Source: Octopus sinensis
Lineage: Eukaryota
Length of the DNA stretch: 64,000 bases
NCBI RefSeq assembly: GCF_006345805.1
Contig: NC_043020.1
Location: 24,552,001 to 24,616,000, forward strand
Reading direction: 5' to 3'
The translations under genes were made by a program, and so were the position numbers. The notes under the pieces were generated by a model. The model was not told where the DNA came from. It saw only the letters and a list, made by a program, of their open reading frames with translations, and made no database searches. Shown piece by piece: positions 1 through 62,354 of the stretch. Within the stretch, counting starts at the first letter, position 1; every line of letters starts with the position of its first letter.

Positions 1-467
1 TACAGCTGTTTAATAGATAGACATACATACAACACACACACGCACACATAAACACACACACACACATATGGACACACACAGCCTTTTATTTTTGTGTTTA
101 CTTTGGTGCTTAAAAAAAATATACATTTCGAAGTTTCTCGCCATTCTTTTTATTTCCTGCTTTATTTTTGTCTCTTTTGAATAATTTATTTTTGGTTCAG
201 CTGTTAGAATTTGGTTTGTGTCTCGCTTCAACTTGGTTTGTTTCAAGAGATGTTTGCAAGTTGACTTTAATTTTTAATTCGTTTCACACTTGTTCTTTAC
301 TGCTTCGACCTGAAAAACCTCAACTTGTCCTGCTAAATCATTCACAGACACCGAAAGACACACATATTGATGCACTCGGGAACTTGTACGTGATGGATGT
401 ATAGTTAGGTAGATAGATGTAGACACATATCTATACACATATATACATATGTTTGTGGGTGTGGGTG

Positions 468-1597: not shown

Positions 1598-1694
1598 CTG
1601 CCAAGGAGAATAAATTTCAGAAAGCGGTCACTTAGTCCATGATCAATTCTTTGAATAAATATTTAGAACTTCAAATAGACACGCATTCACTTAC

Positions 1695-1708
1695 GTACAT
1701 TGAGGCAC
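1695..1708 (-). other. Candidate 14-nt microexon
   Basis: Minus strand reads gtctttctttttccag|gtgcctcaatgtac|GTAAGTga, with a consensus acceptor and donor. It lies about 160 nt downstream of the 1868-1931 candidate. Confidence 0.5.
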
Positions 1709-1867
1709 CTGGAAAAAGAAAGACCCCCCAAAACTAATAGAAGGTGGTCATTTCTGCAAAACATTTGATTAAACTTCGGTTAAAGTAGTATTAATCTTGG
1801 TCTAAAACACAATAGCAAACCCCCTCCTCACAAATTTTAATAAATACAAATTAAAAATAGTTCTTAC

Positions 1868-1931
1868 CCGGGGCCCTTGAACAAGATTTTGTCTATAAAG
1901 TTGTTGTAAAACAGTAAAAGCTGAAACTTAC
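1868..1931 (-). other. Candidate recursive splice site plus 64-nt RS-exon or short exon
   Basis: Minus strand reads atttttatttctcttttag|GTAAGTttcagctttt...caagggccccgg|GTAAGAac. AG at 1933-1932, second donor GT at 1867-1866. Confidence 0.55.
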
Positions 1932-2080
1932 CTAAAAGAGAAATAAAAATAACAGAATTTAAGAAAATATAGAAGAAATCAGAGATGAAAGATAATTATG
2001 GAACAGAAAACAATAATAGACATAGCAACCAAATATTTATTTAAAATATCAAAATAAGCGGAAAGGACAATCCAAAAATG

Positions 2081-2292
2081 AATTTCGAACCTGGGTTCTC
2101 ATTCCTAAGGTTTTTTTGATGTTGTTATTATTATTATTATTATTATTCAGATCACTGCTTGGAATCTTGGGGTTAGTAGCCCGCGCTCTTAACCTCTACG
2201 CCATATGCCCGTAAGCGTAGAGGTTAAGAGCGCGGGTTACTAACCCCAAGATTCCAAGTTCGATTTCAAGCAGTGATCTGTATAATAATAAT

Positions 2293-2598: not shown

Positions 2599-2781
2599 AT
2601 TAACGAGAACAATATTTCCACCATCATCACAACCACCGCGTCTGTCACCATCACCCCCGGGGAGGGACTACTATAAGGTCAATAGCAGTGCAAGAAATAG
2701 CAGCTAAATATCACTGAAATCACTCCACTTAGAAAAGGAAGGAAATGACACATTACATAGTGTAGGCCTACTAAGAAGTAA

Positions 2782-3070
2782 AGGCACGTGGCTTAGTAGT
2801 TAGAATATTCGGTCCACGATCGTAAGGTCGTGAGTTCGATACCCGGTGTCGCTTTGTCCTTGAGCAAGAAACTTTATTTTATGTTGCTCCAGTCCATTCA
2901 GCTGGCAAAAATGAGAGCTGTACCCGTAATTCAGTGGGCCAGCCTTGTCACATTCCATGTGTCACACTAAATCTCCCCGAGAACTACGTTAAGGCTTAGC
3001 GTTTCTGTGGAGTATTCAGCCACTTGCCCGTTAATTTCACGTGCAGACTGTTGCCACCGACGGAGTGCTA
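2782..3070 (+). mobile_element. SINE family B (tRNA-derived)
   Basis: ggcacgtggcttagtagttag...gtgagttcgatacccgg...ccttgagcaaga...cggagtgc; homologous to 24715 and 30839. Confidence 0.8.
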
Positions 3071-4359
3071 GTTTCTTACTAAGAAGCAATAGATGGGATG
3101 GGCATGGCTGGTTGGCTTAATGGAATGTTTGATCAATATCTTTACCTAGGGCTAAAGACAACAACAACAACATCATCAAAAACAACATTAAGAAACCCAT
3201 GGAACTTCTGAAGTACTTCACGATTTCAACATTCTCTCATTAATCTCTCACAGAATTCTGTTTTTTTTTTCTTTTTTCAAATTAAAATAAAAAAATATAG
3301 TAAACAAACAAGAAACACAACAACAAAAATGCGAAAGTAAAAAGAATATCAAACCCTCCTCCCCCACCTCCTTTGCACCTCCACCACCACCCCGCCACCG
3401 CTGCCGTCACCACCACCACCGTATGTGGAAATAAAACAAGGACAACAAGAATAATCATAATAAATTTGATGCAAATTAATCACATGTGCACACACACACA
3501 CACACTCACTTACACATTCACACACACATTCACACACATACGCATTCACACACTCACTCACTCACTCACACATTCACACACACATTCACACACATACGCA
3601 TTCACACACAGGCCGGGACTATGCGAACGTGCTTCTGGGAATTTTCACAGGCAATTTGAGAAAGAGTCAGCTCCGGATTGGGCCGAGATTTCCTTTGATG
3701 TACTTCACGCCCTAACTTCTCTCTTTCTCTCTCACTTCTTCTCTCTCTTCCTCCCCCTCTTTCACTTTCATTCTATCTCTAATTATATTTCTCTCTCTCT
3801 CACTCTCTCACTCTCTCTCTCGCTTCCTTTTTCTCTTTCTCCAACCTTAAATTCATTCTTCATTTCTTTCTCAAGTAAAATCACTCCCCCACCATATTCC
3901 TCTATTTCTCGCTCAATTGCTCTAGTTATCACTCTCACCCTCTCCTCCTCTCCCTCACAAACTTTCTTTTCATCTCTCTCTCTCTCTCTCTCTCTCTTAC
4001 AGTCTCTCTTTAAAACTTTCTTTCTTGGTTTTCGTTCTTATAAATCCTTCATTCACTTCTCTCATTAAAACTTTCCTTCATAAATTTCTTCATTCCTCTA
4101 TCCAATTCCATTCTTCTCTGTCTTCATTCTTTTTCTCACCCCTTTGTTTTTCTTTCCTTCTTCCCACATTTCTTTACTCAGCTTTTTCCTTCATGAATCC
4201 ATTCTTCTTCGATCTCTTTCATTCATTGTTCTATCGTTCTAGCTTTCCATTGCTTTCCTCTCTCCTTTTCTTTCACCAGAGTTTAATCATTCTTTGAAAA
4301 AAATTCTCTTTAACTGAGAGTGCACGCGCATACTGAAGTGTGTGTGTGTGTGCATCCAC

Positions 4360-22289: not shown

Positions 22290-22647
22290 TTCTTTTACTT
22301 GTTTCAGCCATTTGACAGTGGCCATGCTGGAGCACCGCCTTTTAATCGAAGAAGTCGACTCCTGGACTTATTCTTTCGGTCTCTTCTGCCGAACCGCTAA
22401 GGGACGGGGATATAAACACACCAACATCGGTTGTCAAGCAATGGTGGGGTGGGGAAGAACACAGACACACAAACATATATATATATACGACGGGCTTCTT
22501 TCATTTTCCGTCTACCTAATCCACTCACAAGGTTTCGTCGGCCCGAATCTATAATAGAAGACACTTGTCCGAGCTGCCACGCAGTGGGACTGAACCCGGA
22601 ACCATGTGGTTGGGAAGCAAGCTGCTTACCACACAGACATGCCTGCG
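22290..22647 (-). mobile_element. SINE family A, full length
   Basis: cttttacttgtttcagccatttgac...ccacacagacatgcctgcg. Confidence 0.85.
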
Positions 22648-23334
22648 TAAGATTTCTATTTAAATTTCACGTAAATTCTCATTTTTTTTATTACATACAT
22701 TGTCCTCCGTTTCATCACGGGTCTTCTCGTTCTTTACAATAAAAATGTCATATTTAAAGATTACACACACACACACACACACACAATTATATACAAAGAT
22801 TCCTGCAGACGAACATAACCATGTTCTAAATTTCCTGCTTCCTTCCTTCCTTTCTTATACATAAAACTCATCATCTTGTCGTTCACTCCCTCTCTCCCTC
22901 CCTCACCTCTCTTTCACGCTTTAGTCTATCTTTCCTTCTCTCTTTTGTTCACACATTCCCTCTCCCTCGCTCTCTTCAGCTCACCCCCATCTCCTGTCTT
23001 CCGAAAGGACCCTATTTCCTCCACTTGACATCATGTGACATCTGATTGATGATCGTCTTAGAAATTAAAATTACACACACACACACGCACACAAATTAAG
23101 CTGCGGCAAGGTCACCCCCTACATTTTACATTTCGATAATTCTCAAGGGTCTTCTTGCCTCCCACCCAACAAAATCTCACGTCCCGTTTTTCCTCCCACG
23201 CCCTCCATCCCTAATATCTAACAAATACCCCTCCCCCTCCCCAACTATTCGCATCCACACATCCGGTTATAAATTAGACAAGGTCACAAGGTTAATTGGT
23301 AGAAGTGTTGTTAGGTCACCGAACAAAAATATAG

Positions 23335-23530
23335 TCTTTTCTTTTCTACTCTAGGCACAAGGCCTGAAATTTTGTGGGAAGAGACCAGTCGATTAGATCG
23401 ACTCCAGTACGCAACTGGTACTTAATTTATCGACCCCGAAAGGATAAAAGCCAAAGTGGACCTCGGCGGAATTTGAACTCAGAACGTAAAGACAGACGAA
23501 ACACCGCTAAGTATTTCGTCCGGTGTGATG
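23335..23530 (-). mobile_element. SINE family C
   Basis: tttttctactctaggcacaaggcctgaaat...ggcggaatttgaactcagaacg. Confidence 0.8.
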
Positions 23531-24130
23531 AACAAAAATATATTGCAATATTTAGCTACGACCATCGACGTTCTGCGTTCGAATCACATTCAAAGCAACT
23601 TTTCTTTTGCTTTCTTTTTTTTTTCAGAATGAATAACATAAAATACTACTCACGCATTGGTAGTTCGTGAAATTTAAGTCAATATATAAAAATTAATTCT
23701 AGAATCTGCAGTTAGATCTACATTAGAAGATCATAGGAGAAATGTTAATATAACCGAGTATAGAAGAACTTTTTGGTAATCAGGCGGGGAAGCACTATTG
23801 AGCTTTCTGGTGCTGATTCAATCTTGTACGTCTTTGATCGTCAGTCAGCTATTACTGAGCAGCCTGTTTTATAAATTCTATTTGTGTTTTATGATAAATT
23901 ATGTAAATATCTATGTAAATGCCTACTACTGGGCAACGGCTGAGCAAATTTGAGCCTCAGCAAACTATTCATCTGTAGCCCTGCGGTCTAGCAACGATTC
24001 CGTGACACTCAGCATCAGAAAACCAATAGTACTGGTCAAAAATTTGTCGATGTGGTCGTAGCAAGGCTGCGATATTTTGGCCATATAACGCAGAACAGGT
24101 ATGCTAGTGTCACAATAGTAATGACCATAA

Positions 24131-24478: not shown

Positions 24479-24714
24479 ACATATTATATTCATATATGCC
24501 AATAATACTTAAGTTATATACGACAATATGATGTAATAAGATATGTATGACAATGTAGTTGTTGTAGTGGTCAAGCTATGGGTTCGGTGTACTTCTTTCG
24601 CTCTGGGGACAGAAAGGGATAAGGGAAGGAGCTAGAGAATTCCCTAACTCTGAAGAGATGTTCTAGTCTTTGCTATAAGGCTTTAAGAATGTTATGAGTG
24701 AAAGGTCATGTGAA

Positions 24715-25032
24715 TGCGTGTGGCTTAGTGGTTAAGGGTATTCGGATCATGACCCTAAGGTTGTGAGATCGATTCCTGGCTGCGTGTTGTGTCAGCAAGA
24801 CAATTTATTCCACGTTGCTTCAGTCCATTCAGCTGGCAAAAGTGAGCTGTACCTGTAATTCAAAAGGGGCCAGTCTTGTCACATTTTGTATTGCGCAGAT
24901 TCTTTCTGAGAACTAGGTTAAGGATATTCCTGTCTATGGAATACTCAGCCACATGCACGTTAATTTCATGGTCAGGCTGTTCCGTTGATCGGATCAACTG
25001 GAACCCTCGTTGTCGTCATCGGCGGAGTACCA
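24715..25032 (+). mobile_element. SINE family B
   Basis: gtgtggcttagtggttaagggtattcgg...cagctggcaaaa...cggagtacc. Confidence 0.8.
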
Positions 25033-25298
25033 GTTTTATCATAAGGTCACTATCAATAGGTCGCCTTAACAGATGCAGGACCAACATTTGCTGTCACCCT
25101 GAAGGTTATGCGTGCTGTAAAATAGTAAAATAAAGCTCTACCCTAACATTTGGATATTAATCAGGGATGGTCATGGGTGAAACGCATAAAGTTGCCGGAT
25201 CAGGTTTGATATTTAGCTTTAAACCGGCAGTGGCAAGAACAAAATCCATCGGCTAAAATGTGAAACCGAAAAGATAATACAGGAGAAAATAGTCTTAC

Positions 25299-25358
25299 CG
25301 TGAACTGTGTTACTAGAAACTCTGGTGTTGGAAGAAAAAAGTTAGCAGCGGTACTTAC
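25299..25358 (-). other. Candidate recursive splice site plus 60-nt RS-exon or short exon
   Basis: Minus strand reads ttttgtttctatttttctcttttttctag|GTAAGTaccgctgctaac...cagttcacg|GTAAGAct. Strong polypyrimidine tract, AG at 25360-25359, GTAAGT starting at 25358, second donor GT at 25298-25297. Confidence 0.55.
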
Positions 25359-25408
25359 CTAGAAAAAAGAGAAAAATAGAAACAAAATTAGTAACAAATA
25401 CAATATAT

Positions 25409-25458
<50 letters not shown>

Positions 25459-25461
25459 TAT

Positions 25462-25497
<36 letters not shown>

Positions 25498-25549
25498 ATA
25501 TACACACACATATATACACATACAGATATATATATATATAATACATGTA

Positions 25550-25766
25550 CTCTTTTACTTGTTTCAGTCCTTTGACTGGGGCCATGCTGGAGCACCGCCT
25601 TTAGTCGAGCAAATCGACCCCGGGACTTATTCTTTGTAAGCCCTGTACTTACTCTATCGGTCTCTTATGCCGAACCGCTAGCTGACGGCGACGTAAACAC
25701 ACCAGCAACGGTTGTCAAGCAATGCTAGGGGTACAAACACAGACACACAAACATGCACACACACAC

Positions 25767-25770
<4 letters not shown>
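25550..25770 (-). mobile_element. SINE family A, 3' half
   Basis: cttttacttgtttcagtcctttgactggggccatgctggagcaccgcc... Confidence 0.8.
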
Positions 25771-25842
<72 letters not shown>

Positions 25843-30838: not shown

Positions 30839-31145
30839 AGCGCGTGGCTTAGTGGTTAGGGCATTCGCCTCACGACCGTAACGACGTGAGTTCGATTCTT
30901 GGAGGTGCATTGTGTCCTTGAAAAAGACTATTTTCACGTTGTTCCAGGGTCCACTCAGCTGGCAAAAATGAGTTATACCAGTATTTCAAAGGAGCCAGCC
31001 TTGTCACATTCTGTGTCACACTGAATCTTCCTAAGAACTACATTGAGGGTTCATGTGTCTGGAGTACTCAGCCACTTGTATGCTATTGTCATGCAGAGGC
31101 TGTTTCGTTGATCGGATCAATTGGACTATTCAGTGTCATAATCGT
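30839..31145 (+). mobile_element. SINE family B
   Basis: gcgcgtggcttagtggttagggcattcg...gagttcgattc...cagctggcaaaaatgag. Confidence 0.8.
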
Positions 31146-31305
31146 CGGCGTGCTGGGGATGAAAGTAGAATATTGTGGTGGAGATGGAGCTGGAGGTGAA
31201 AATTTATGACGAGGCGATGTTGGAGGTTATTGTGACGGAGGTGTTGGTGGTGACAATGTTTTATAACGCTGATGAAGGTGGTGATAGTTATGATGATGAT
31301 GTTGG

Positions 31306-35600: not shown

Positions 35601-37629
35601 TCCGTGGTGGTTTTGGGTATGTTAATAGTTGTGGTTATGTTGGTGTTGAAGTAGTGGTTGATGTAATATTGCGTTTGGTGGTGGTGGCGGTGGTAGTATT
35701 GGTGGTTGTGAGAACGTTGGTATTGTAATAATTGTTGATACAGTACTGGTGATAGTTTTGGCGGTAGCATTGTAGTGGTTGCCATCGGTGGTTGTTTTGG
35801 CATCAAAAGTATCGACAATGGCTACATAAATAGTAGTGATGATTGTGGTATTGGTGACAGCAGTAGTGGTGGTAGTTGTGTAAGAGGTATTTGTGGTTGT
35901 GGTAACTGGTTAGAATCATAATAGTGGCGTGTGTTAGAAGTGGTGGTGGCGGTGGAAGTGTAGGGAAAATGTGACACGGGGGGAAATCCTATCAGAGGTA
36001 GTATTGGTGGTAGTGTGTGTGTGTGGTTGTATAGTTGTGTTGGTTCGGCTGTGTTGGCACATCGCGTTTGCGGTCTCGTTGCATTAGGGACGATGTGATG
36101 GAGATCGCGGTAGTGGTGTTGGTCTCCGTGTTGATGTTTGCAGTGGTCGTGGTGGTAGTGTTGGTTGTGACACTCGTGGTAGTAGCATTGGTGGTGAGGT
36201 GTAGCAATTCTGTTGAAAGGCTGGGATTAACAAGATAGATTTCCGAATTAACAATGTAATTATATCAACATCTGTCCAGTATAGTGGCCGGCTGCATATT
36301 TGCGCGTTGACCGTTAGTGGTCTCTGAGTGGTCAGCCCAAGGAGGAGGGGCAACCGGCCAGCTATTAGAAACGAACATATGCTAATGATATGCGTGAGGG
36401 TGGAAGAGGTATATATTATAGCTATGAACGACTAATAGTTTCATACACTGGAGATATTTTCTAGGCGTATTCTTAAAACCTGTCTAAAAATACATCCAAT
36501 GCCTAGCTGCCACTGGATGGCGCACTTCTTTCGTTAATCTTACCTTTGAGGGAAAAGTGTTATCTAGCTATCTATCTCTATATATAAACCAGAGTTTAAG
36601 TGTGAATTACTATTAGTTTCCGGCTTCTGAAGATATAATGGTCGGACAAGCTTGTACAGTATGGCGTGTATTTTGTCTGACGATTGTATTTCCAGATGCA
36701 TGAAACTTATAGTAACTCGCACATAAAAATCTGCATATATTTAATGACATTTATCGCAAATTAGCTAAAGTAATTTTTTGTTGATTCTACCAATAACGTA
36801 TATAGAGGAACAGTGAGAGGAAATATAGGGAACGAGGACGTGGAAAAGAGAGAGCGAATGTGTGTGTGTGTGTGTGTGTGTGTGTAGTATAACCATTGTG
36901 TGCGTATGTTTCTCTATGTTTAAGTCGTTCAGAATTTCGCTTTGCGACCATGTCGTTTCGAGATCAATCCCGAAGAATTTCAGTTAGATTAATCGAACCC
37001 AATACTTTTCTTAAGCCTGGTACTCATTCTATCGATTTTTTTGCCGAACCGGTAAGTTACGGGGACGTAAACACATCAACACCGGTTGTCAAGCGTGGGT
37101 TGGAGGAACAAACCAAGACACAGAAACACACACAGACATATACAGAGTTTTAGTTTATACATCACTAGAATCACATCCTTTATTATGCTATGATAAATAT
37201 CCGGAATTGTTCTCTGCTATTTCCTTTATCAAGTCCTCTGTAATGTTAATTGTTTGTTTATACTTCTTGCACTGAAGTGAACAGTGATATATAATTAAAT
37301 TTAATCAAATTAATTAAATTATTCTACCATGAATTTGCATGTCTTAACATCACTGTTTGAAACGATGGAATGCACGAATTAAAATTCTTTCAAATTTTAA
37401 CATTTCTCCATTTTTAACAAATTTGTTGAGTTTTATGGGATTCCTTTCCATAAATTCACATAACATACCAAATACAAGTATTATTTTCATATTCACAGCT
37501 ACCAGCAAAATATGAAGAATCTTTATTAGAAATCATTTTTTGGAACCCTCCAAAATAAAGGACGAAATATAATTCAACCTTTTCACAAACACACAAACAC
37601 ACACACACATATACATACATGTATACACG

Positions 37630-50184: not shown

Positions 50185-50284
50185 NNNNNNNNNNNNNNNN
50201 NNNNNNNNNNNNNNNNNNNNNNNNNNNNNNNNNNNNNNNNNNNNNNNNNNNNNNNNNNNNNNNNNNNNNNNNNNNNNNNNNNNN
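50185..50284. other. Assembly gap (100 N)
   Basis: Run of N; a round size suggests the true length is unknown. Confidence 0.99.
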
Positions 50285-51388: not shown

Positions 51389-51550
51389 CGATGGGCTTCT
51401 TTCAGTTTCCGTCTATTAAATCCATTCAAAAGGCCTTGGTCGGCCCGAGGTTATAATAAAAAACACTAGCCCAGGGTTCCACGCAGTGGGACTGAACCCG
51501 GAACCATGTAGTTGGCAACCAAGCTACTTACCACACAGCCACTCCTACGC
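51135..51550 (-). mobile_element. SINE family A, full length, inverted
   Basis: ttgtttcagtcatttgactgcggcc...ccacacagccactcctacgcc. Confidence 0.85.
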
Positions 51551-52439
51551 CTTGGTCTTAAGCACAGTTCTTACATGGCTCCTGAAACACTACCATGGAC
51601 CCCCATTTACTAGATTGCATTGTGGACCCCCAAAACTCTTATATGGGCCCCAAATGCGAACCCCTTGTCCAAAGATTCATGTAGATTTTCCTCCTCCTGT
51701 CTGCTTCCAGTATATTGGTCTGGTTGCTTCTCTGTTTAGTATTATTACTATATTCAGGATATACGAATCAAATGTTCTAGGAACATCCGGTGCTGTCGTT
51801 CAAAACCACCACAAGGGTGAAATGTACGTAAGGAACAAATGATTATAAACTTGTGTCTATATCCAGAGGAGATGGCGGATGTATCGGCGAAGTAATGCAC
51901 CAATCAAAAATAAAGCTGTTGTTTGGTGAGTATATACTTCCATTAACAATTACGCTAATGTGGACTTAGCCATTTGACAAACTGAATTCAAAAGAAAATG
52001 TAGAGACTAAGTAATGTGATCGACGTTATCGATTAACACAGATGAAAATGACCGCTGTTCAAACAGATCGATGCAAAACAAAGATGGCTGAACCTAGCAG
52101 GATTCTTCATGTTGTGTATGGAGAATCCTGTTAGTGTATAACAGCGTATACAAATGGAAAGAGAGGTGGAGGGAGAAGGACAGGATTAAGGACAACAAAA
52201 GCATCGAATGTTCTAAAGGCATTGATCTGTTCTGATGTGTTCTTGAAATTGTTTCATTTTAACATGAAACACAACCGATAGCAACCCTGGCACTGGATGT
52301 GCACTGACAGATCTACATCAATGCAAACAGGCAAACACACTTTACATACATACATAATACATATATATATATATATATGGGACAAACAGAAAGCACACCC
52401 CATATAAATATATGTGTGTGTGTCTATGTGTGGAGAGAG

Positions 52440-56336: not shown

Positions 56337-56804
56337 CTTATCCACCATTGCACACGCCCGCGCTATTCCAACCGAAATGCTCTTAATTTATGGTCGAAAA
56401 TTACATCCGCACATAACTACAGCGGCGATGATGATAATGATGATGATAGTAGTGATGATAAAGACGGTTATGATGATGATGACGATGGTGATGACAGCGA
56501 CAACGAAAACGACTGCGATAATAGTGATGATGATAGTGATGGCTATAGTGATGGTGATGATAATAATCATAGTCACAAACGTTTGAGGCAAGGGTAGAAT
56601 CGCTTAAATCGACACATGTACACTCACCACAGATTCCTAATTCGAATCACCTGATCTGCTAGAAATACCAGCCAATTCTTAGTATTTTCTGCAATTCATT
56701 TGTCGATCCTAGCAGGCTTGACTTCGATCAGTTACTTCTTTTTCGGTCGACTGATCGATGAAATTGTATTTCGATCAACTGTTTTTAATGAATAAATATA
56801 GCCA

Positions 56805-57175
56805 AGCATGGCTGTGTGTTGAGACGTATGCTTCCCAACTACATAGTTTCGGGTTCAGTCCCGTTGCATGGCACCTTGGGCAAGTGTCTTCTACTATAGC
56901 CTCGGGGCCGACCAAAGCTTTGAGAGTGGATTTGGTAGATGGAAACATATATAACTATGTGAGCATCTGTGTTTGTCTCCCACCACCGTTTGACAATCGG
57001 TGTTGGTGTGTTAACATCCCAGTAACTTGGCGGTTCGGAAAAAGAAAACAACAGAATAAGTACCAGGCTCCAAAAAGGAATGAGTACCAGTGTCGCTTCA
57101 TTCGACAAGAACATTCAAGGCAGTGCTCCGGTATGGCCGCAGTCTAACAACAAACAAGTGAAAGCTAAGATAAAA
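56805..57175 (+). mobile_element. SINE family A, near full length
   Basis: gcatggctgtgtgttgagacgtatgcttcccaac...ccttgggcaagtgtctt...aaacaagtgaaag. Confidence 0.8.
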
Positions 57176-60870: not shown

Positions 60871-61150
60871 TCATCATCCGGTCGAGCTTGTTCGGACATT
60901 TTGAATTCGCACATGCCATCCATCTTGGTCCTGCATTTGTTGAGGGAGGGTTTCAAGGAGGCATCCAGGGTCTCTGGTCAGTTGATCTACAGACAATGAT
61001 AGCGTAGGGCACTTGCCAGCTCTTGGTTAGTTCGCCAGCAAAGCGTAATCGCCTCTCTCTCTCTTTCTTATAATAGGGGAAATTTTCATGCCGCTGTTTC
61101 TTGGTGAGATAAGGTCTCCAAGATATGGCTAAGACTTCTCTTAACATTCG
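60871..61150 (-). mobile_element. RTE-type (RTE-X-like) LINE 3' remnant
   Basis: MLREVLAISWRPYLTK...RERRLRFAG, then LPQQMQDQDGWHVRIQNVRTSST. This resembles the recalled RTE C-terminus MLRxxLNISW...RERRLRFAGH...AMxDRDxW. Confidence 0.8.
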
Positions 61151-62354
61151 AATGTAAATTCCATCTAGTTTAGATTCCAGAACTGGTCCTTGATTAAACG
61201 ACAGCGAATGATAAAAAAATAAAATAAAATCGGCCTCAGTGAGGTCTGAACTTTAGAGTGCCGAGTGTGAGAATGATTATCACAAAGTAGTCTCATTAAC
61301 ACTAACGACATCTCGCCACTTATCCGCTAAATATATTGTCTGGAAACAAGAACTGAATGACACTGTGGTTACGGTTGGTCTCTCTTTAAGCATAGGTCTG
61401 TAGGATCGCGTCTGACTTGAGAGTAAACTAACACACCACAACAAGTTAAAACATAAACCCACTTGATACCTCGTCAACAACAGCTCCACTCCTTCCATCG
61501 TATTATTTCTCCGCCTCTCCCTCATCCCACTTCCTTACACCAACAACCCCGCTTCAACTGACGTCATTCGACTTCTCACACCCACCATAATGAAACATCA
61601 ATAACGTCACAACACATTTTTTCCACTTGGAGGAGATATTTCGGAGGGGAATGTCATTAATCACCATTTTTTTTTTTTCTTTTTAACGTTTTAATATCTT
61701 AGTTTCAAATGTTTATAAACAGATGTATACACTGCCTCAGTGAAAACGGTAACCAGATGGTTAGGTGTTCGGCTCATTATCGATTCCTTTGTCGGGCGTC
61801 GCGTTACATCGTCAGGCAAGTCCTATCATTTCACCTTACCCCAATCTACACTGCTGGATATTCGTGCAGCTGTTCGCTCCCACCTGCAGCCACGTCTAGG
61901 ATATTCTGGTAACTCGATGATGGGGTGGCCCAAAGAGTGTCCTGTAACTGATCACGACTACATAAGCATCTAATACAATTAGCGAGGGAAGACAATGTGC
62001 TTCAGGAAGGGCATCTCTGATGAGTTGTCAGTAATGCCAAGTGCAACAGTAGACGCGAAACCGGTTCTACGACATAACCAAGTACATACTAATCGGCAAT
62101 TTAAACGTGTTTGTATACCTTCATATATATATGCATGTATGTATGTATGTATGTATGTATGTATGTATGTATGTATTATGTATGTATTATGTATGTATTA
62201 TGTATGTATGTATGTGTGTGTGAGTTAAATATAAGGCAATATGACTCTCCCCAGACAAAACGTTTGTTTCAACACACGAATTCACATAAAGAATCTTGCA
62301 AACCAGATACAAAACTGAAGTCTAATAATAATAATAATTATTATTATTATTATA

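What the first reader, a model, noticed from the sequence alone, without database searches (positions are those of the whole stretch)
1868..1950. Recursive splice site with RS-exon architecture (minus strand, site 1)
Seen: atttttatttctcttttAG|GTAAGT, where a strong acceptor is followed directly by a perfect donor, then a second donor GTAAGA 64 nt later. Established: this is the ratchet-point/RS-exon layout used for stepwise removal of very long introns in Drosophila and in vertebrate neuronal genes. Inference: recursive splicing may operate in this cephalopod intron. I do not know of a cephalopod description but cannot check. Alternative: an ordinary short exon starting with GT, or use of internal acceptors (53-nt exon from 1920, 25-nt exon from 1892).
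Basis: partly seen in the sequence, partly recalled or inferred. Interest (0 to 1): 0.72.

Follow-up and report, generated by a model that had tools for sequence, protein, structure and literature searches.

The report
Predicted recursive splice sites, octopus intron
A stretch of octopus-like non-coding DNA carries two independent copies of the sequence layout that flies and vertebrates use to remove very long introns in steps, so stepwise ("recursive") splicing probably also operates in cephalopods, though no RNA data could be checked here.

Summary
On the minus strand a 157-nt AG-free, pyrimidine-rich tract ends in TTTTAG(1933-1932)|GTAAGT(1931-1926), and 64 nt later comes GGG|GTAAGA (GT at 1867).

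Alone this site is only moderately unlikely (about 0.01-0.02 per window). But the only other AGGTAAGT in the 64 kb lies on the same strand (junction at 25358). It has the same layout: a 16/17 pyrimidine tract, TACTAAT branch point at -30, TAG|GTAAGT, and ACG|GTAAGA 60 nt later.

The two sites share no homology beyond these signals, and neither has another copy in the window. That both have all these features by chance is roughly 1e-7.

No credible coding exon, promoter-like CpG island or Rfam RNA is present. The window looks like one long intron (or intergenic DNA) full of SINEs and microsatellites. The SINEs match Octopus bimaculoides.

Best reading (about 0.6): two ratchet points with cryptic 64- and 60-nt RS-exons in an intron longer than 64 kb of a minus-strand gene.

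Transcription, junction or lariat reads, the host gene and cross-species conservation could not be tested with these tools. No cephalopod or mollusc report of recursive splicing was found in the searched library. If real, this is a new member of a known kind.

The parts
1934..2090 (-). Site 1: 157-nt AG-free, T-rich zone upstream of the acceptor. It includes the polypyrimidine tract (15 of 17 Y at 1935-1951) and a branch-point-like CTGAT (A at 1979, position -48).
   Evidence: AG-free gaps of 150 nt or more are 0.9% of all AG gaps in the window.
1926..1933 (-). Site 1 ratchet point: acceptor AG (1933-1932) fused to donor GTAAGT (1931-1926). The predicted splice junction lies between 1932 and 1931.
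   Evidence: Acceptor 11.3 bits plus donor 10.3 bits, second highest joint score in the window.
1868..1931 (-). Site 1 cryptic RS-exon, 64 nt. It is not a multiple of 3, has stop codons in 2 of 3 frames, and has no protein match.
1862..1867 (-). Site 1 RS-exon donor GGG|GTAAGA, followed by the U-rich ACTATTTTTAATTT. It scores 8.5 bits, weaker than the reconstituted donor (up to 12.7 bits).
25361..25393 (-). Site 2: branch-point consensus TACTAAT (25393-25387, A at 25388, position -30) and a polypyrimidine tract (16 of 17 Y). No AG lies between them and the acceptor.
25353..25360 (-). Site 2 ratchet point: acceptor TAG (AG 25360-25359) fused to donor GTAAGT (25358-25353).
   Evidence: Joint score 24.7 bits, the highest in the window.
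25299..25358 (-). Site 2 cryptic RS-exon, 60 nt, with stops in 2 of 3 frames.
25293..25298 (-). Site 2 RS-exon donor ACG|GTAAGA, followed by CTATTTTCTCC. It scores 8.8 bits.

Best explanation
Positions 1868-1950 are one of two recursive splice sites (ratchet points with cryptic RS-exons). Both lie on the minus strand, inside what is most likely a single intron longer than 64 kb of an octopus gene transcribed from high to low window coordinates.

Proposed mechanism (inferred from the fly and vertebrate systems, not shown here):
1. As the polymerase passes each site, the short segment (60 nt at 25358-25299, then 64 nt at 1931-1868) is recognised by exon definition. Recognition uses its strong acceptor (branch point, long AG-free pyrimidine tract, YAG) and its own downstream donor G|GTAAGA.
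2. The upstream exon is spliced to the acceptor, removing the intron part transcribed so far as a lariat.
3. This places the exon's last bases in front of GTAAGT and re-creates a near-perfect donor (xAG|GTAAGT).
4. That donor outcompetes the weaker GTAAGA donor in the next step, so the 60/64-nt segment leaves with the next intron piece and no trace remains in the mRNA.

The roughly 23.4-kb segment between the two sites would thus be removed as a separate lariat.
For: Shown directly:
- Exact motif and coordinates.
- The only two AGGTAAGT octamers in 128 kb of strand sequence are both on the minus strand. Both are preceded by 15-16 pyrimidines out of 17, and both are followed by GGTAAGA at +64 and +60.
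- Of 27 GTAAGT hexamers in the window, only these two follow a pyrimidine tract plus AG.
- Only 1.8% of window positions have at least 15 of 17 Y upstream.
- Only 3.7% of positions have a donor of at least 8.8 bits at +30..110.
- Given two octamers, the chance that both have both features is therefore about 5e-7, and about 2e-7 with the same-strand factor.
- The two sites have the top two joint PWM scores by 4-7 bits. Markov nulls give 0.003-0.017 full architectures per window.
- The sites are not copies of each other: RS-exon interiors and downstream flanks align no better than shuffles.
- They are not copies of a repeat. Both are unique within the window and absent from an O. bimaculoides control locus that does share the window's SINEs.
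- Upstream AG-free zones are 157 and 189 nt, with CTGAT at -48 and TACTAAT at -30.
- The reconstituted donor scores 11.8-12.7 bits against 8.5 and 8.8 bits for the RS-exon donors.
- The RS-exons are short, closed in 2 of 3 frames, and one is frame-shifting.

The published fly description matches: a cryptic RS-exon of about 50 nt, poorly conserved, generally out of frame, with donor competition (PMC8605326).

Context fits a very long intron: no credible coding exon, no CpG island and no Rfam RNA.
Against: - There is no direct evidence that the minus strand is transcribed or that the window is intronic. No flanking exon or host gene was identified.
- No RNA-seq, lariat or conservation data were reachable.
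- The plus strand has G>C (12765 G against 10975 C). In mammals that would point to plus-strand transcription, but here the skew is driven by microsatellites.
- Real octopus DNA can give high acceptor-plus-donor PWM scores without being a GTAAGT site. The control locus has one 29.5-bit CCAG|GTGGGC in 31 kb, so the PWM score alone is weak evidence.
- In mammals most motif matches in long introns are not detectably used.
- My PWMs are generic metazoan ones, not trained on octopus.
- The thresholds were chosen after seeing the sites.
Confidence: 0.6

Rival explanations
1. The two segments are ordinary expressed short exons of a minus-strand transcript (alternative cassette, poison or UTR exons, or lncRNA exons). 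They merely happen to start with GTAAGT. Or they are 'expressed RS-exons' that are usually included rather than skipped.
For: Both segments are flanked by good acceptors and donors, with sizes typical of small exons (60 and 64 nt). The 60-nt one preserves the frame and is open in one frame. In mammals thousands of annotated exons begin with a donor-like sequence and are kept in mRNA by the exon junction complex (PMC6224609).
Against: An exon starting with the exact hexamer GTAAGT is expected about once in several thousand, yet here two of two do. The 64-nt segment shifts the frame, and both segments are closed in 2 of 3 frames. Peptides from the open frames and flanks match nothing among 5.8 billion proteins at E<=0.1, although sensitivity for 20-residue peptides is low. 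The internal donor is stronger than the downstream one, which in flies predicts skipping.
Confidence: 0.2
2. Chance or non-functional sequence. The window is intergenic or transcribed only on the plus strand, and the two motif clusters are coincidences in T-rich, low-complexity DNA.
For: The AGGTAAGT count equals the chance expectation. Markov nulls allow 0.14-0.48 strong AG|GT sites per window. A control octopus locus has a strong AG|GT site too. No exon, promoter or RNA evidence anchors a minus-strand gene. Site 2's AG-free zone is largely TA/TG microsatellite.
Against: The full layout (pyrimidine tract, first AG after a long AG-free zone, GTAAGT, GGTAAGA at +60/64) occurs twice, on one strand, in unrelated unique sequences. 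The joint chance is about 1e-7, or 0.003-0.017 expected per window by simulation.
Confidence: 0.15
3. The splice-signal cluster belongs to a transposable-element family that carries such signals, so the two sites are repeat copies.
For: SINEs and another repeat lie within 150-900 nt of both sites: 2081-2161 and 2780-3052 near site 1, and 24710-25002 and 25443-25840 near site 2.
Against: Both sites lie in sequence with no other copy in the window and none in the O. bimaculoides control locus. The two sites do not align with each other beyond the splice signals.
Confidence: 0.03

Closest known systems
Drosophila intronic ratchet points with cryptic RS-exons (Hatton 1998; Burnette 2005; Duff 2015; Joseph 2018; Pai 2018; Joseph & Lai 2021, PMC8605326)
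   Same: Pyrimidine tract + YAG|GTAAGT. A short cryptic exon of about 50 nt ends in its own donor. The internal (ratchet) donor is stronger than the downstream donor. The exon content is not protein-like and is mostly out of frame or closed. There are several sites per long intron, tens of kb apart.
   Different: The taxon is a cephalopod mollusc rather than an insect. Both acceptors are TAG. There is no RNA evidence and no conservation data. The host gene is unknown.
Vertebrate recursive splicing via RS-exons in long neuronal genes (Sibley 2015; Blazquez 2018, PMC6224609)
   Same: Definition of an RS-exon that is spliced to the preceding exon and re-creates a 5' splice site. It occurs in very long introns. 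The genome is AT-rich and repeat-rich with long introns, as in vertebrates.
   Different: Vertebrate cryptic sites are very few (nine definitive). Whether octopus resembles the fly situation (hundreds) or the vertebrate one is unknown.
Poison or decoy exons in long introns
   Same: Short, non-coding, stop-containing pseudo-exons with good splice sites.
   Different: Poison and decoy exons do not need a consensus donor immediately after the acceptor AG. Here both segments start with GTAAGT.

Membership tests
Recursive splice site / ratchet point with RS-exon | [quoted passage not shown] | tested here: met
   TTTCTCTTTTAG|GTAAGT at 1932/1931 and TTTTTTCTAG|GTAAGT at 25359/25358. They have the top two joint PWM scores in the window.
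Recursive splice site / ratchet point with RS-exon | A downstream 5' splice site that defines a short cryptic RS-exon (about 50 nt in flies) | tested here: met
   GGG|GTAAGA at +64 and ACG|GTAAGA at +60. Only 3.7% of window positions have a donor of at least 8.8 bits at +30..110.
Recursive splice site / ratchet point with RS-exon | The regenerated (ratchet) donor is stronger than the RS-exon donor, so the RS-exon is skipped | tested here: met
   With a generic PWM, xAG|GTAAGT scores 11.8-12.7 bits against 8.5 and 8.8 bits. The real upstream exon end is unknown, so this is conditional.
Recursive splice site / ratchet point with RS-exon | RS-exon content is non-coding, out of frame or stop-containing | tested here: met
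   The 64-nt exon is frame-shifting. Both exons have stops in 2 of 3 frames. There is no protein match.
Recursive splice site / ratchet point with RS-exon | Located deep inside a very long intron, on the sense strand of a transcribed gene | tested here: inconclusive
   There is no credible exon in 64 kb on either strand, which fits a long intron. Neither the host gene nor the strand of transcription could be established.
Recursive splice site / ratchet point with RS-exon | Evolutionary conservation of the AG|GTAAGT core above that of the flanks | not testable with these tools
   No octopus genomic DNA can be searched by nucleotide sequence. Look-ups and scans all returned nothing.
Recursive splice site / ratchet point with RS-exon | RNA evidence: exon-to-site junction reads, saw-tooth intron coverage, recursive lariats | not testable with these tools
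   No RNA-seq access.

The most novel reading that the evidence does not exclude
Recursive splicing with the full RS-exon architecture operates in cephalopods, that is, in Lophotrochozoa. The mechanism would then be ancestral to bilaterians. Octopus, whose introns expanded through repeats, would use fly-like dedicated ratchet points every few tens of kb in its giant (probably neuronal) introns. A possible lineage-specific RS-exon donor context is GGTAAGA(A)CTATTTT, shared by both sites.
Probability: 0.5. Interest if true: 0.6.

Novelty: new member of a known kind. Interest (0 to 1): 0.5.

Why it matters
Recursive splicing has been demonstrated in insects and vertebrates. The searched library holds no paper linking it substantively to octopus, cephalopods or molluscs.

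Octopus genomes have very long, repeat-filled introns in genes of a large nervous system. That is exactly the setting where stepwise intron removal is thought to protect splicing fidelity.

Two clean sites in one window give precise, testable coordinates for junction and lariat reads. They also suggest that a genome-wide scan (sense against antisense strand of long introns) could show whether octopus follows the fly pattern (hundreds of dedicated sites) or the vertebrate one (few). That would bear on whether the RS-exon mechanism is ancestral to bilaterians.

Practically, such sites explain unannotated splice junctions, and mutations at them can cause cryptic exon inclusion.

Tried and rejected
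1. Orthologous or same-species DNA through exact ORF look-ups. Four window ORFs are not on record.

2. Homologues of 13 short ORFs around both sites, including the open frames of the RS-exons, joined into one query. No hit at E<=0.1. So no conservation test was possible, and there is no sign the segments are coding.

3. Exact 24-mers of both sites in JGI metagenome contigs. No hits.

4. Host-gene search. ORFs of at least 90 aa, filtered stop-to-stop segments of at least 40 aa, and acceptor-ORF-donor triples gave only microsatellite translations, SINE copies and a decayed LINE-like tail. No exon was found.

5. The LINE-like ORF (60877-61534, minus strand) as an organism marker. No protein hit and no Pfam hit. 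Its LINE identity rests only on my memory of the '...RRLRFAGH' type C-terminal motif.

6. Rfam at gathering thresholds and ARAGORN. Nothing, so no intron-hosted RNA reveals the transcribed strand.

7. Paralogy of the two sites or membership in a repeat family. Rejected.

8. GC/AT skew, poly(A)-signal counts (72 AATAAA on the plus strand, 60 on the minus) and CpG observed/expected as strand or promoter indicators. Uninformative or dominated by microsatellites.

9. The joint PWM score alone as proof. Downgraded after the O. bimaculoides control locus yielded a 29.5-bit AG|GT site that is not GTAAGT and lacks a downstream donor.

Full report
**Observation**

Reading the minus strand confirms the finding base for base.
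- A T-rich tract ends in TTTCTCTTTTAG, with the AG at 1933-1932.
- It is followed at once by GTAAGT (1931-1926).
- A second donor, GGG|GTAAGA, starts at 1867, so a 64-nt segment (1931-1868) is bracketed by an acceptor and a donor.

**Is it more than chance?**

The octamer AGGTAAGT occurs twice in the window against 2.16 expected, so the octamer alone means nothing. Both occurrences, however, are on the minus strand and both carry a pyrimidine tract. The pattern YYYYYYNYAGGTRAGT has 2 matches and none in 100 shuffles.

The second site reads TTTTTCTCTTTTTTCTAG|GTAAGT, with the junction G at 25358. Exactly 60 nt later it has ACG|GTAAGA (GT at 25298). It is thus the same architecture as site 1, with the same heptamer GGTAAGA as downstream donor and a similar U-rich continuation (ACTATTTTT against CTATTTTC).

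A generic acceptor-plus-donor PWM ranks the two sites first and second of 299 AGGT positions, at 24.7 and 21.6 bits. The next best is 17.6 on the minus strand and 16.3 on the plus strand.

Markov-chain nulls of order 1-5 give 0.14-0.48 sites of at least 21.5 bits per window. They give 0.003-0.017 if a donor of at least 9 bits at +30..110 is also required. The two GGTAAGA donors score 8.5 and 8.8 bits, slightly under that cut-off, so this null is approximate.

A conditional estimate from the window itself:
- 1.8% of positions have at least 15 of 17 pyrimidines upstream.
- 3.7% of positions have a donor of at least 8.8 bits at +30..110.
- Two random octamers would both have both features with probability about 5e-7, halved again for lying on the same strand.
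- Of 27 GTAAGT hexamers in the window, only these two follow a pyrimidine tract plus AG.

Site 1 alone is only moderately unlikely (about 1-2% per window). The pair is not plausibly chance. These thresholds were set after seeing the sites and the PWMs are not octopus-trained. A control octopus locus also shows that a high joint PWM score can occur in real DNA: a 29.5-bit CCAG|GTGGGC with no downstream donor. The argument therefore rests on the full architecture, not the score.

**Independence of the two sites**

- A forced alignment shows identity only at the splice signals.
- Local alignments of the RS-exon interiors and of the downstream flanks score no better than shuffled sequences. The T-rich upstream tracts are marginal at p about 0.03, as their composition would predict.
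- A self-BLAST shows both sites in sequence that is unique within the window. Site 1 sits in an island at 900-2080. Site 2 sits in an island at 25003-25442, between a repeat and a microsatellite/SINE block.
- Neither region has a copy in a 39-kb O. bimaculoides locus that does contain at least five copies of one of the window's SINEs.

They are therefore neither paralogues nor repeat-borne.

**Further anatomy**

- The acceptor AG of site 1 is the first AG after a 157-nt AG-free stretch. This is in the top 1% of AG gaps and is not microsatellite. A CTGAT lies at -48.
- Site 2 has a 189-nt AG-free stretch, largely TA/TG microsatellite. It has a textbook TACTAAT with the branch A at -30.
- After ligation to a typical exon end, the regenerated donor would be CAG or AAG|GTAAGT (12.7 or 11.8 bits). 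The RS-exon donors score 8.5 and 8.8 bits.
- The 64-nt segment shifts the frame and is closed in two frames. The 60-nt segment is closed in two frames.
- Their open-frame peptides and twelve neighbouring short ORFs match nothing in 5.8 billion proteins at E<=0.1.

**Context**

- No ORF or acceptor-ORF-donor triple in the window looks like a coding exon.
- There is no tRNA, no Rfam family and no CpG island; whole-window CpG observed/expected is 0.85.
- The window is AT-rich (31-44% GC), packed with microsatellites and SINE copies, and has a 100-N gap at 50185-50284.
- SINE-derived ORFs hit only two proteins in the whole database, both from Octopus bimaculoides at 75-80% identity. The SINE at 22400-22750 has several 78-86% copies in O. 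bimaculoides chromosome CM046612.1.
- KLHL10 exon boundaries in that locus show canonical signals: a long pyrimidine tract with CAG or TAG, and AAG|GTAAGA and ATG|GTGAGT donors. The motifs at the two sites are therefore the species' own splice consensus.

**Interpretation**

The layout matches the published definition of a ratchet point with a cryptic RS-exon.
- In Drosophila the ratchet point is a tandem acceptor|donor that encompasses a short (about 50 nt) cryptic RS-exon flanked by a downstream donor.
- The ratchet donor suppresses the RS-exon donor by competition (PMC8605326).
- Recursive sites in flies are confined to the longest introns and are conserved (PMC6110457).

I therefore propose two recursive splice sites in a minus-strand intron longer than 64 kb, used in the order 25358 then 1931, 23.4 kb apart.

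The following steps are inferred by analogy: exon definition of the 60/64-nt segment, splicing of the upstream exon to it, regeneration of xAG|GTAAGT, and its preferential use so that the segment is discarded. Only the sequence signals and their statistical excess are shown here.

**What is missing**

Transcription of the minus strand, the host gene, junction, lariat and saw-tooth evidence, and cross-species conservation could not be tested. All routes to other octopus DNA or RNA failed.

The plus strand's G>C excess would, by the mammalian rule, hint at plus-strand transcription. It is concentrated in microsatellite blocks and I give it little weight.

**Rivals**

- Expressed or ordinary short exons, 0.2. 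This is hard to square with two of two starting with GTAAGT and with the closed frames.
- Non-functional coincidence, 0.15. This is contradicted by the joint statistics.
- Repeat-borne signals, 0.03. This is contradicted.

**Novelty**

Full-text searches found no paper combining recursive splicing with octopus. The single co-occurrence with 'cephalopod' was in a reference list. The co-occurrences with 'mollus' were in two papers on unrelated topics, judged from their titles and one occurrence of each term.

If confirmed, this is a new taxon for a known mechanism, that is, a new member of a known kind. Its value is mainly in extending RS-exon-type recursive splicing to Lophotrochozoa and in giving exact coordinates to test.

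**Scores**

Interest 0.5. Confidence in the functional reading about 0.6.

Noticed in passing
window 25293-25393, minus strand: A second recursive-splice-site-like locus with the same architecture as the finding: TACTAAT branch point, 16/17 Y tract, TAG|GTAAGT, a 60-nt segment, then ACG|GTAAGA. It lies 23.4 kb upstream in the minus-strand sense.
   Followed up: yes
window 1689-1730, minus strand: 223 nt downstream of site 1 there is a strong acceptor, TCTTTCTTTTTCCAG|, followed after only 14 nt (GTGCCTCAATGTAC, 1708-1695) by a consensus donor, GTAAGTGA (1694). It has the third-best AG|GT joint score on the minus strand (17.6 bits). It could be a microexon-like unit, an auxiliary splice-signal cluster, or chance.
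   Followed up: partly
window 36536-36562, minus strand: The third AGGTAAG on the minus strand: CACTTTTCCCTCAAAG|GTAAGATT (junction G at 36543). It has a poor AAG acceptor, 12 of 17 Y, and no downstream donor. It is at most a weak additional recursive-site candidate. The plus strand has no AGGTAAG at all.
   Followed up: partly
window 2081-2200, 22400-22750, 23370-23670, 51420-51840, 56780-57150 and others: Many copies, in both orientations, of SINE-like repeats. One next to site 1 has a tRNA-like GGTTCGAA box followed by an (AAT)n tail. Their translated copies hit only Octopus bimaculoides proteins, and they have 78-86% copies in an O. bimaculoides chromosome locus. They support an octopus origin for the window.
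   Followed up: partly
window 2780-3120, 24710-25130, 30890-31200, plus strand: A second repeat family (translated motifs '...VHSAGKNE...' and '...EYSATC.LIS...') has copies near both recursive-site candidates, but in no consistent position relative to them.
   Followed up: partly
window 60877-61534, minus strand: Frame-shifted ORF fragments (...LDGIYIRMLREVLAISW...RRLRFAGE...) resemble, from memory, the C-terminal tail of a non-LTR retrotransposon ORF2. No protein hit and no Pfam hit supports this.
   Followed up: partly
window 50185-50284: A run of exactly 100 N, which is an assembly gap.
   Followed up: no
window 28000-64000, plus strand: A strong positive GC skew occurs in blocks (for example 34-36 kb 0.40, 54-56 kb 0.44, 58-60 kb 0.48), driven by TG/AG-type microsatellites and purine-rich low-complexity tracts. 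Most long 'ORFs' in the window are translations of these repeats.
   Followed up: no
L001 13615-13642, plus strand (O. bimaculoides KLHL10 intron 1): A very strong acceptor fused to a GT: TTCCCTCTCTCTCCTTCCAG|GTGGGCGA, on the sense strand of a 3.5-kb intron, with no downstream donor. It may be an unannotated alternative acceptor. It was used here only as a caution about PWM scores.
   Followed up: no
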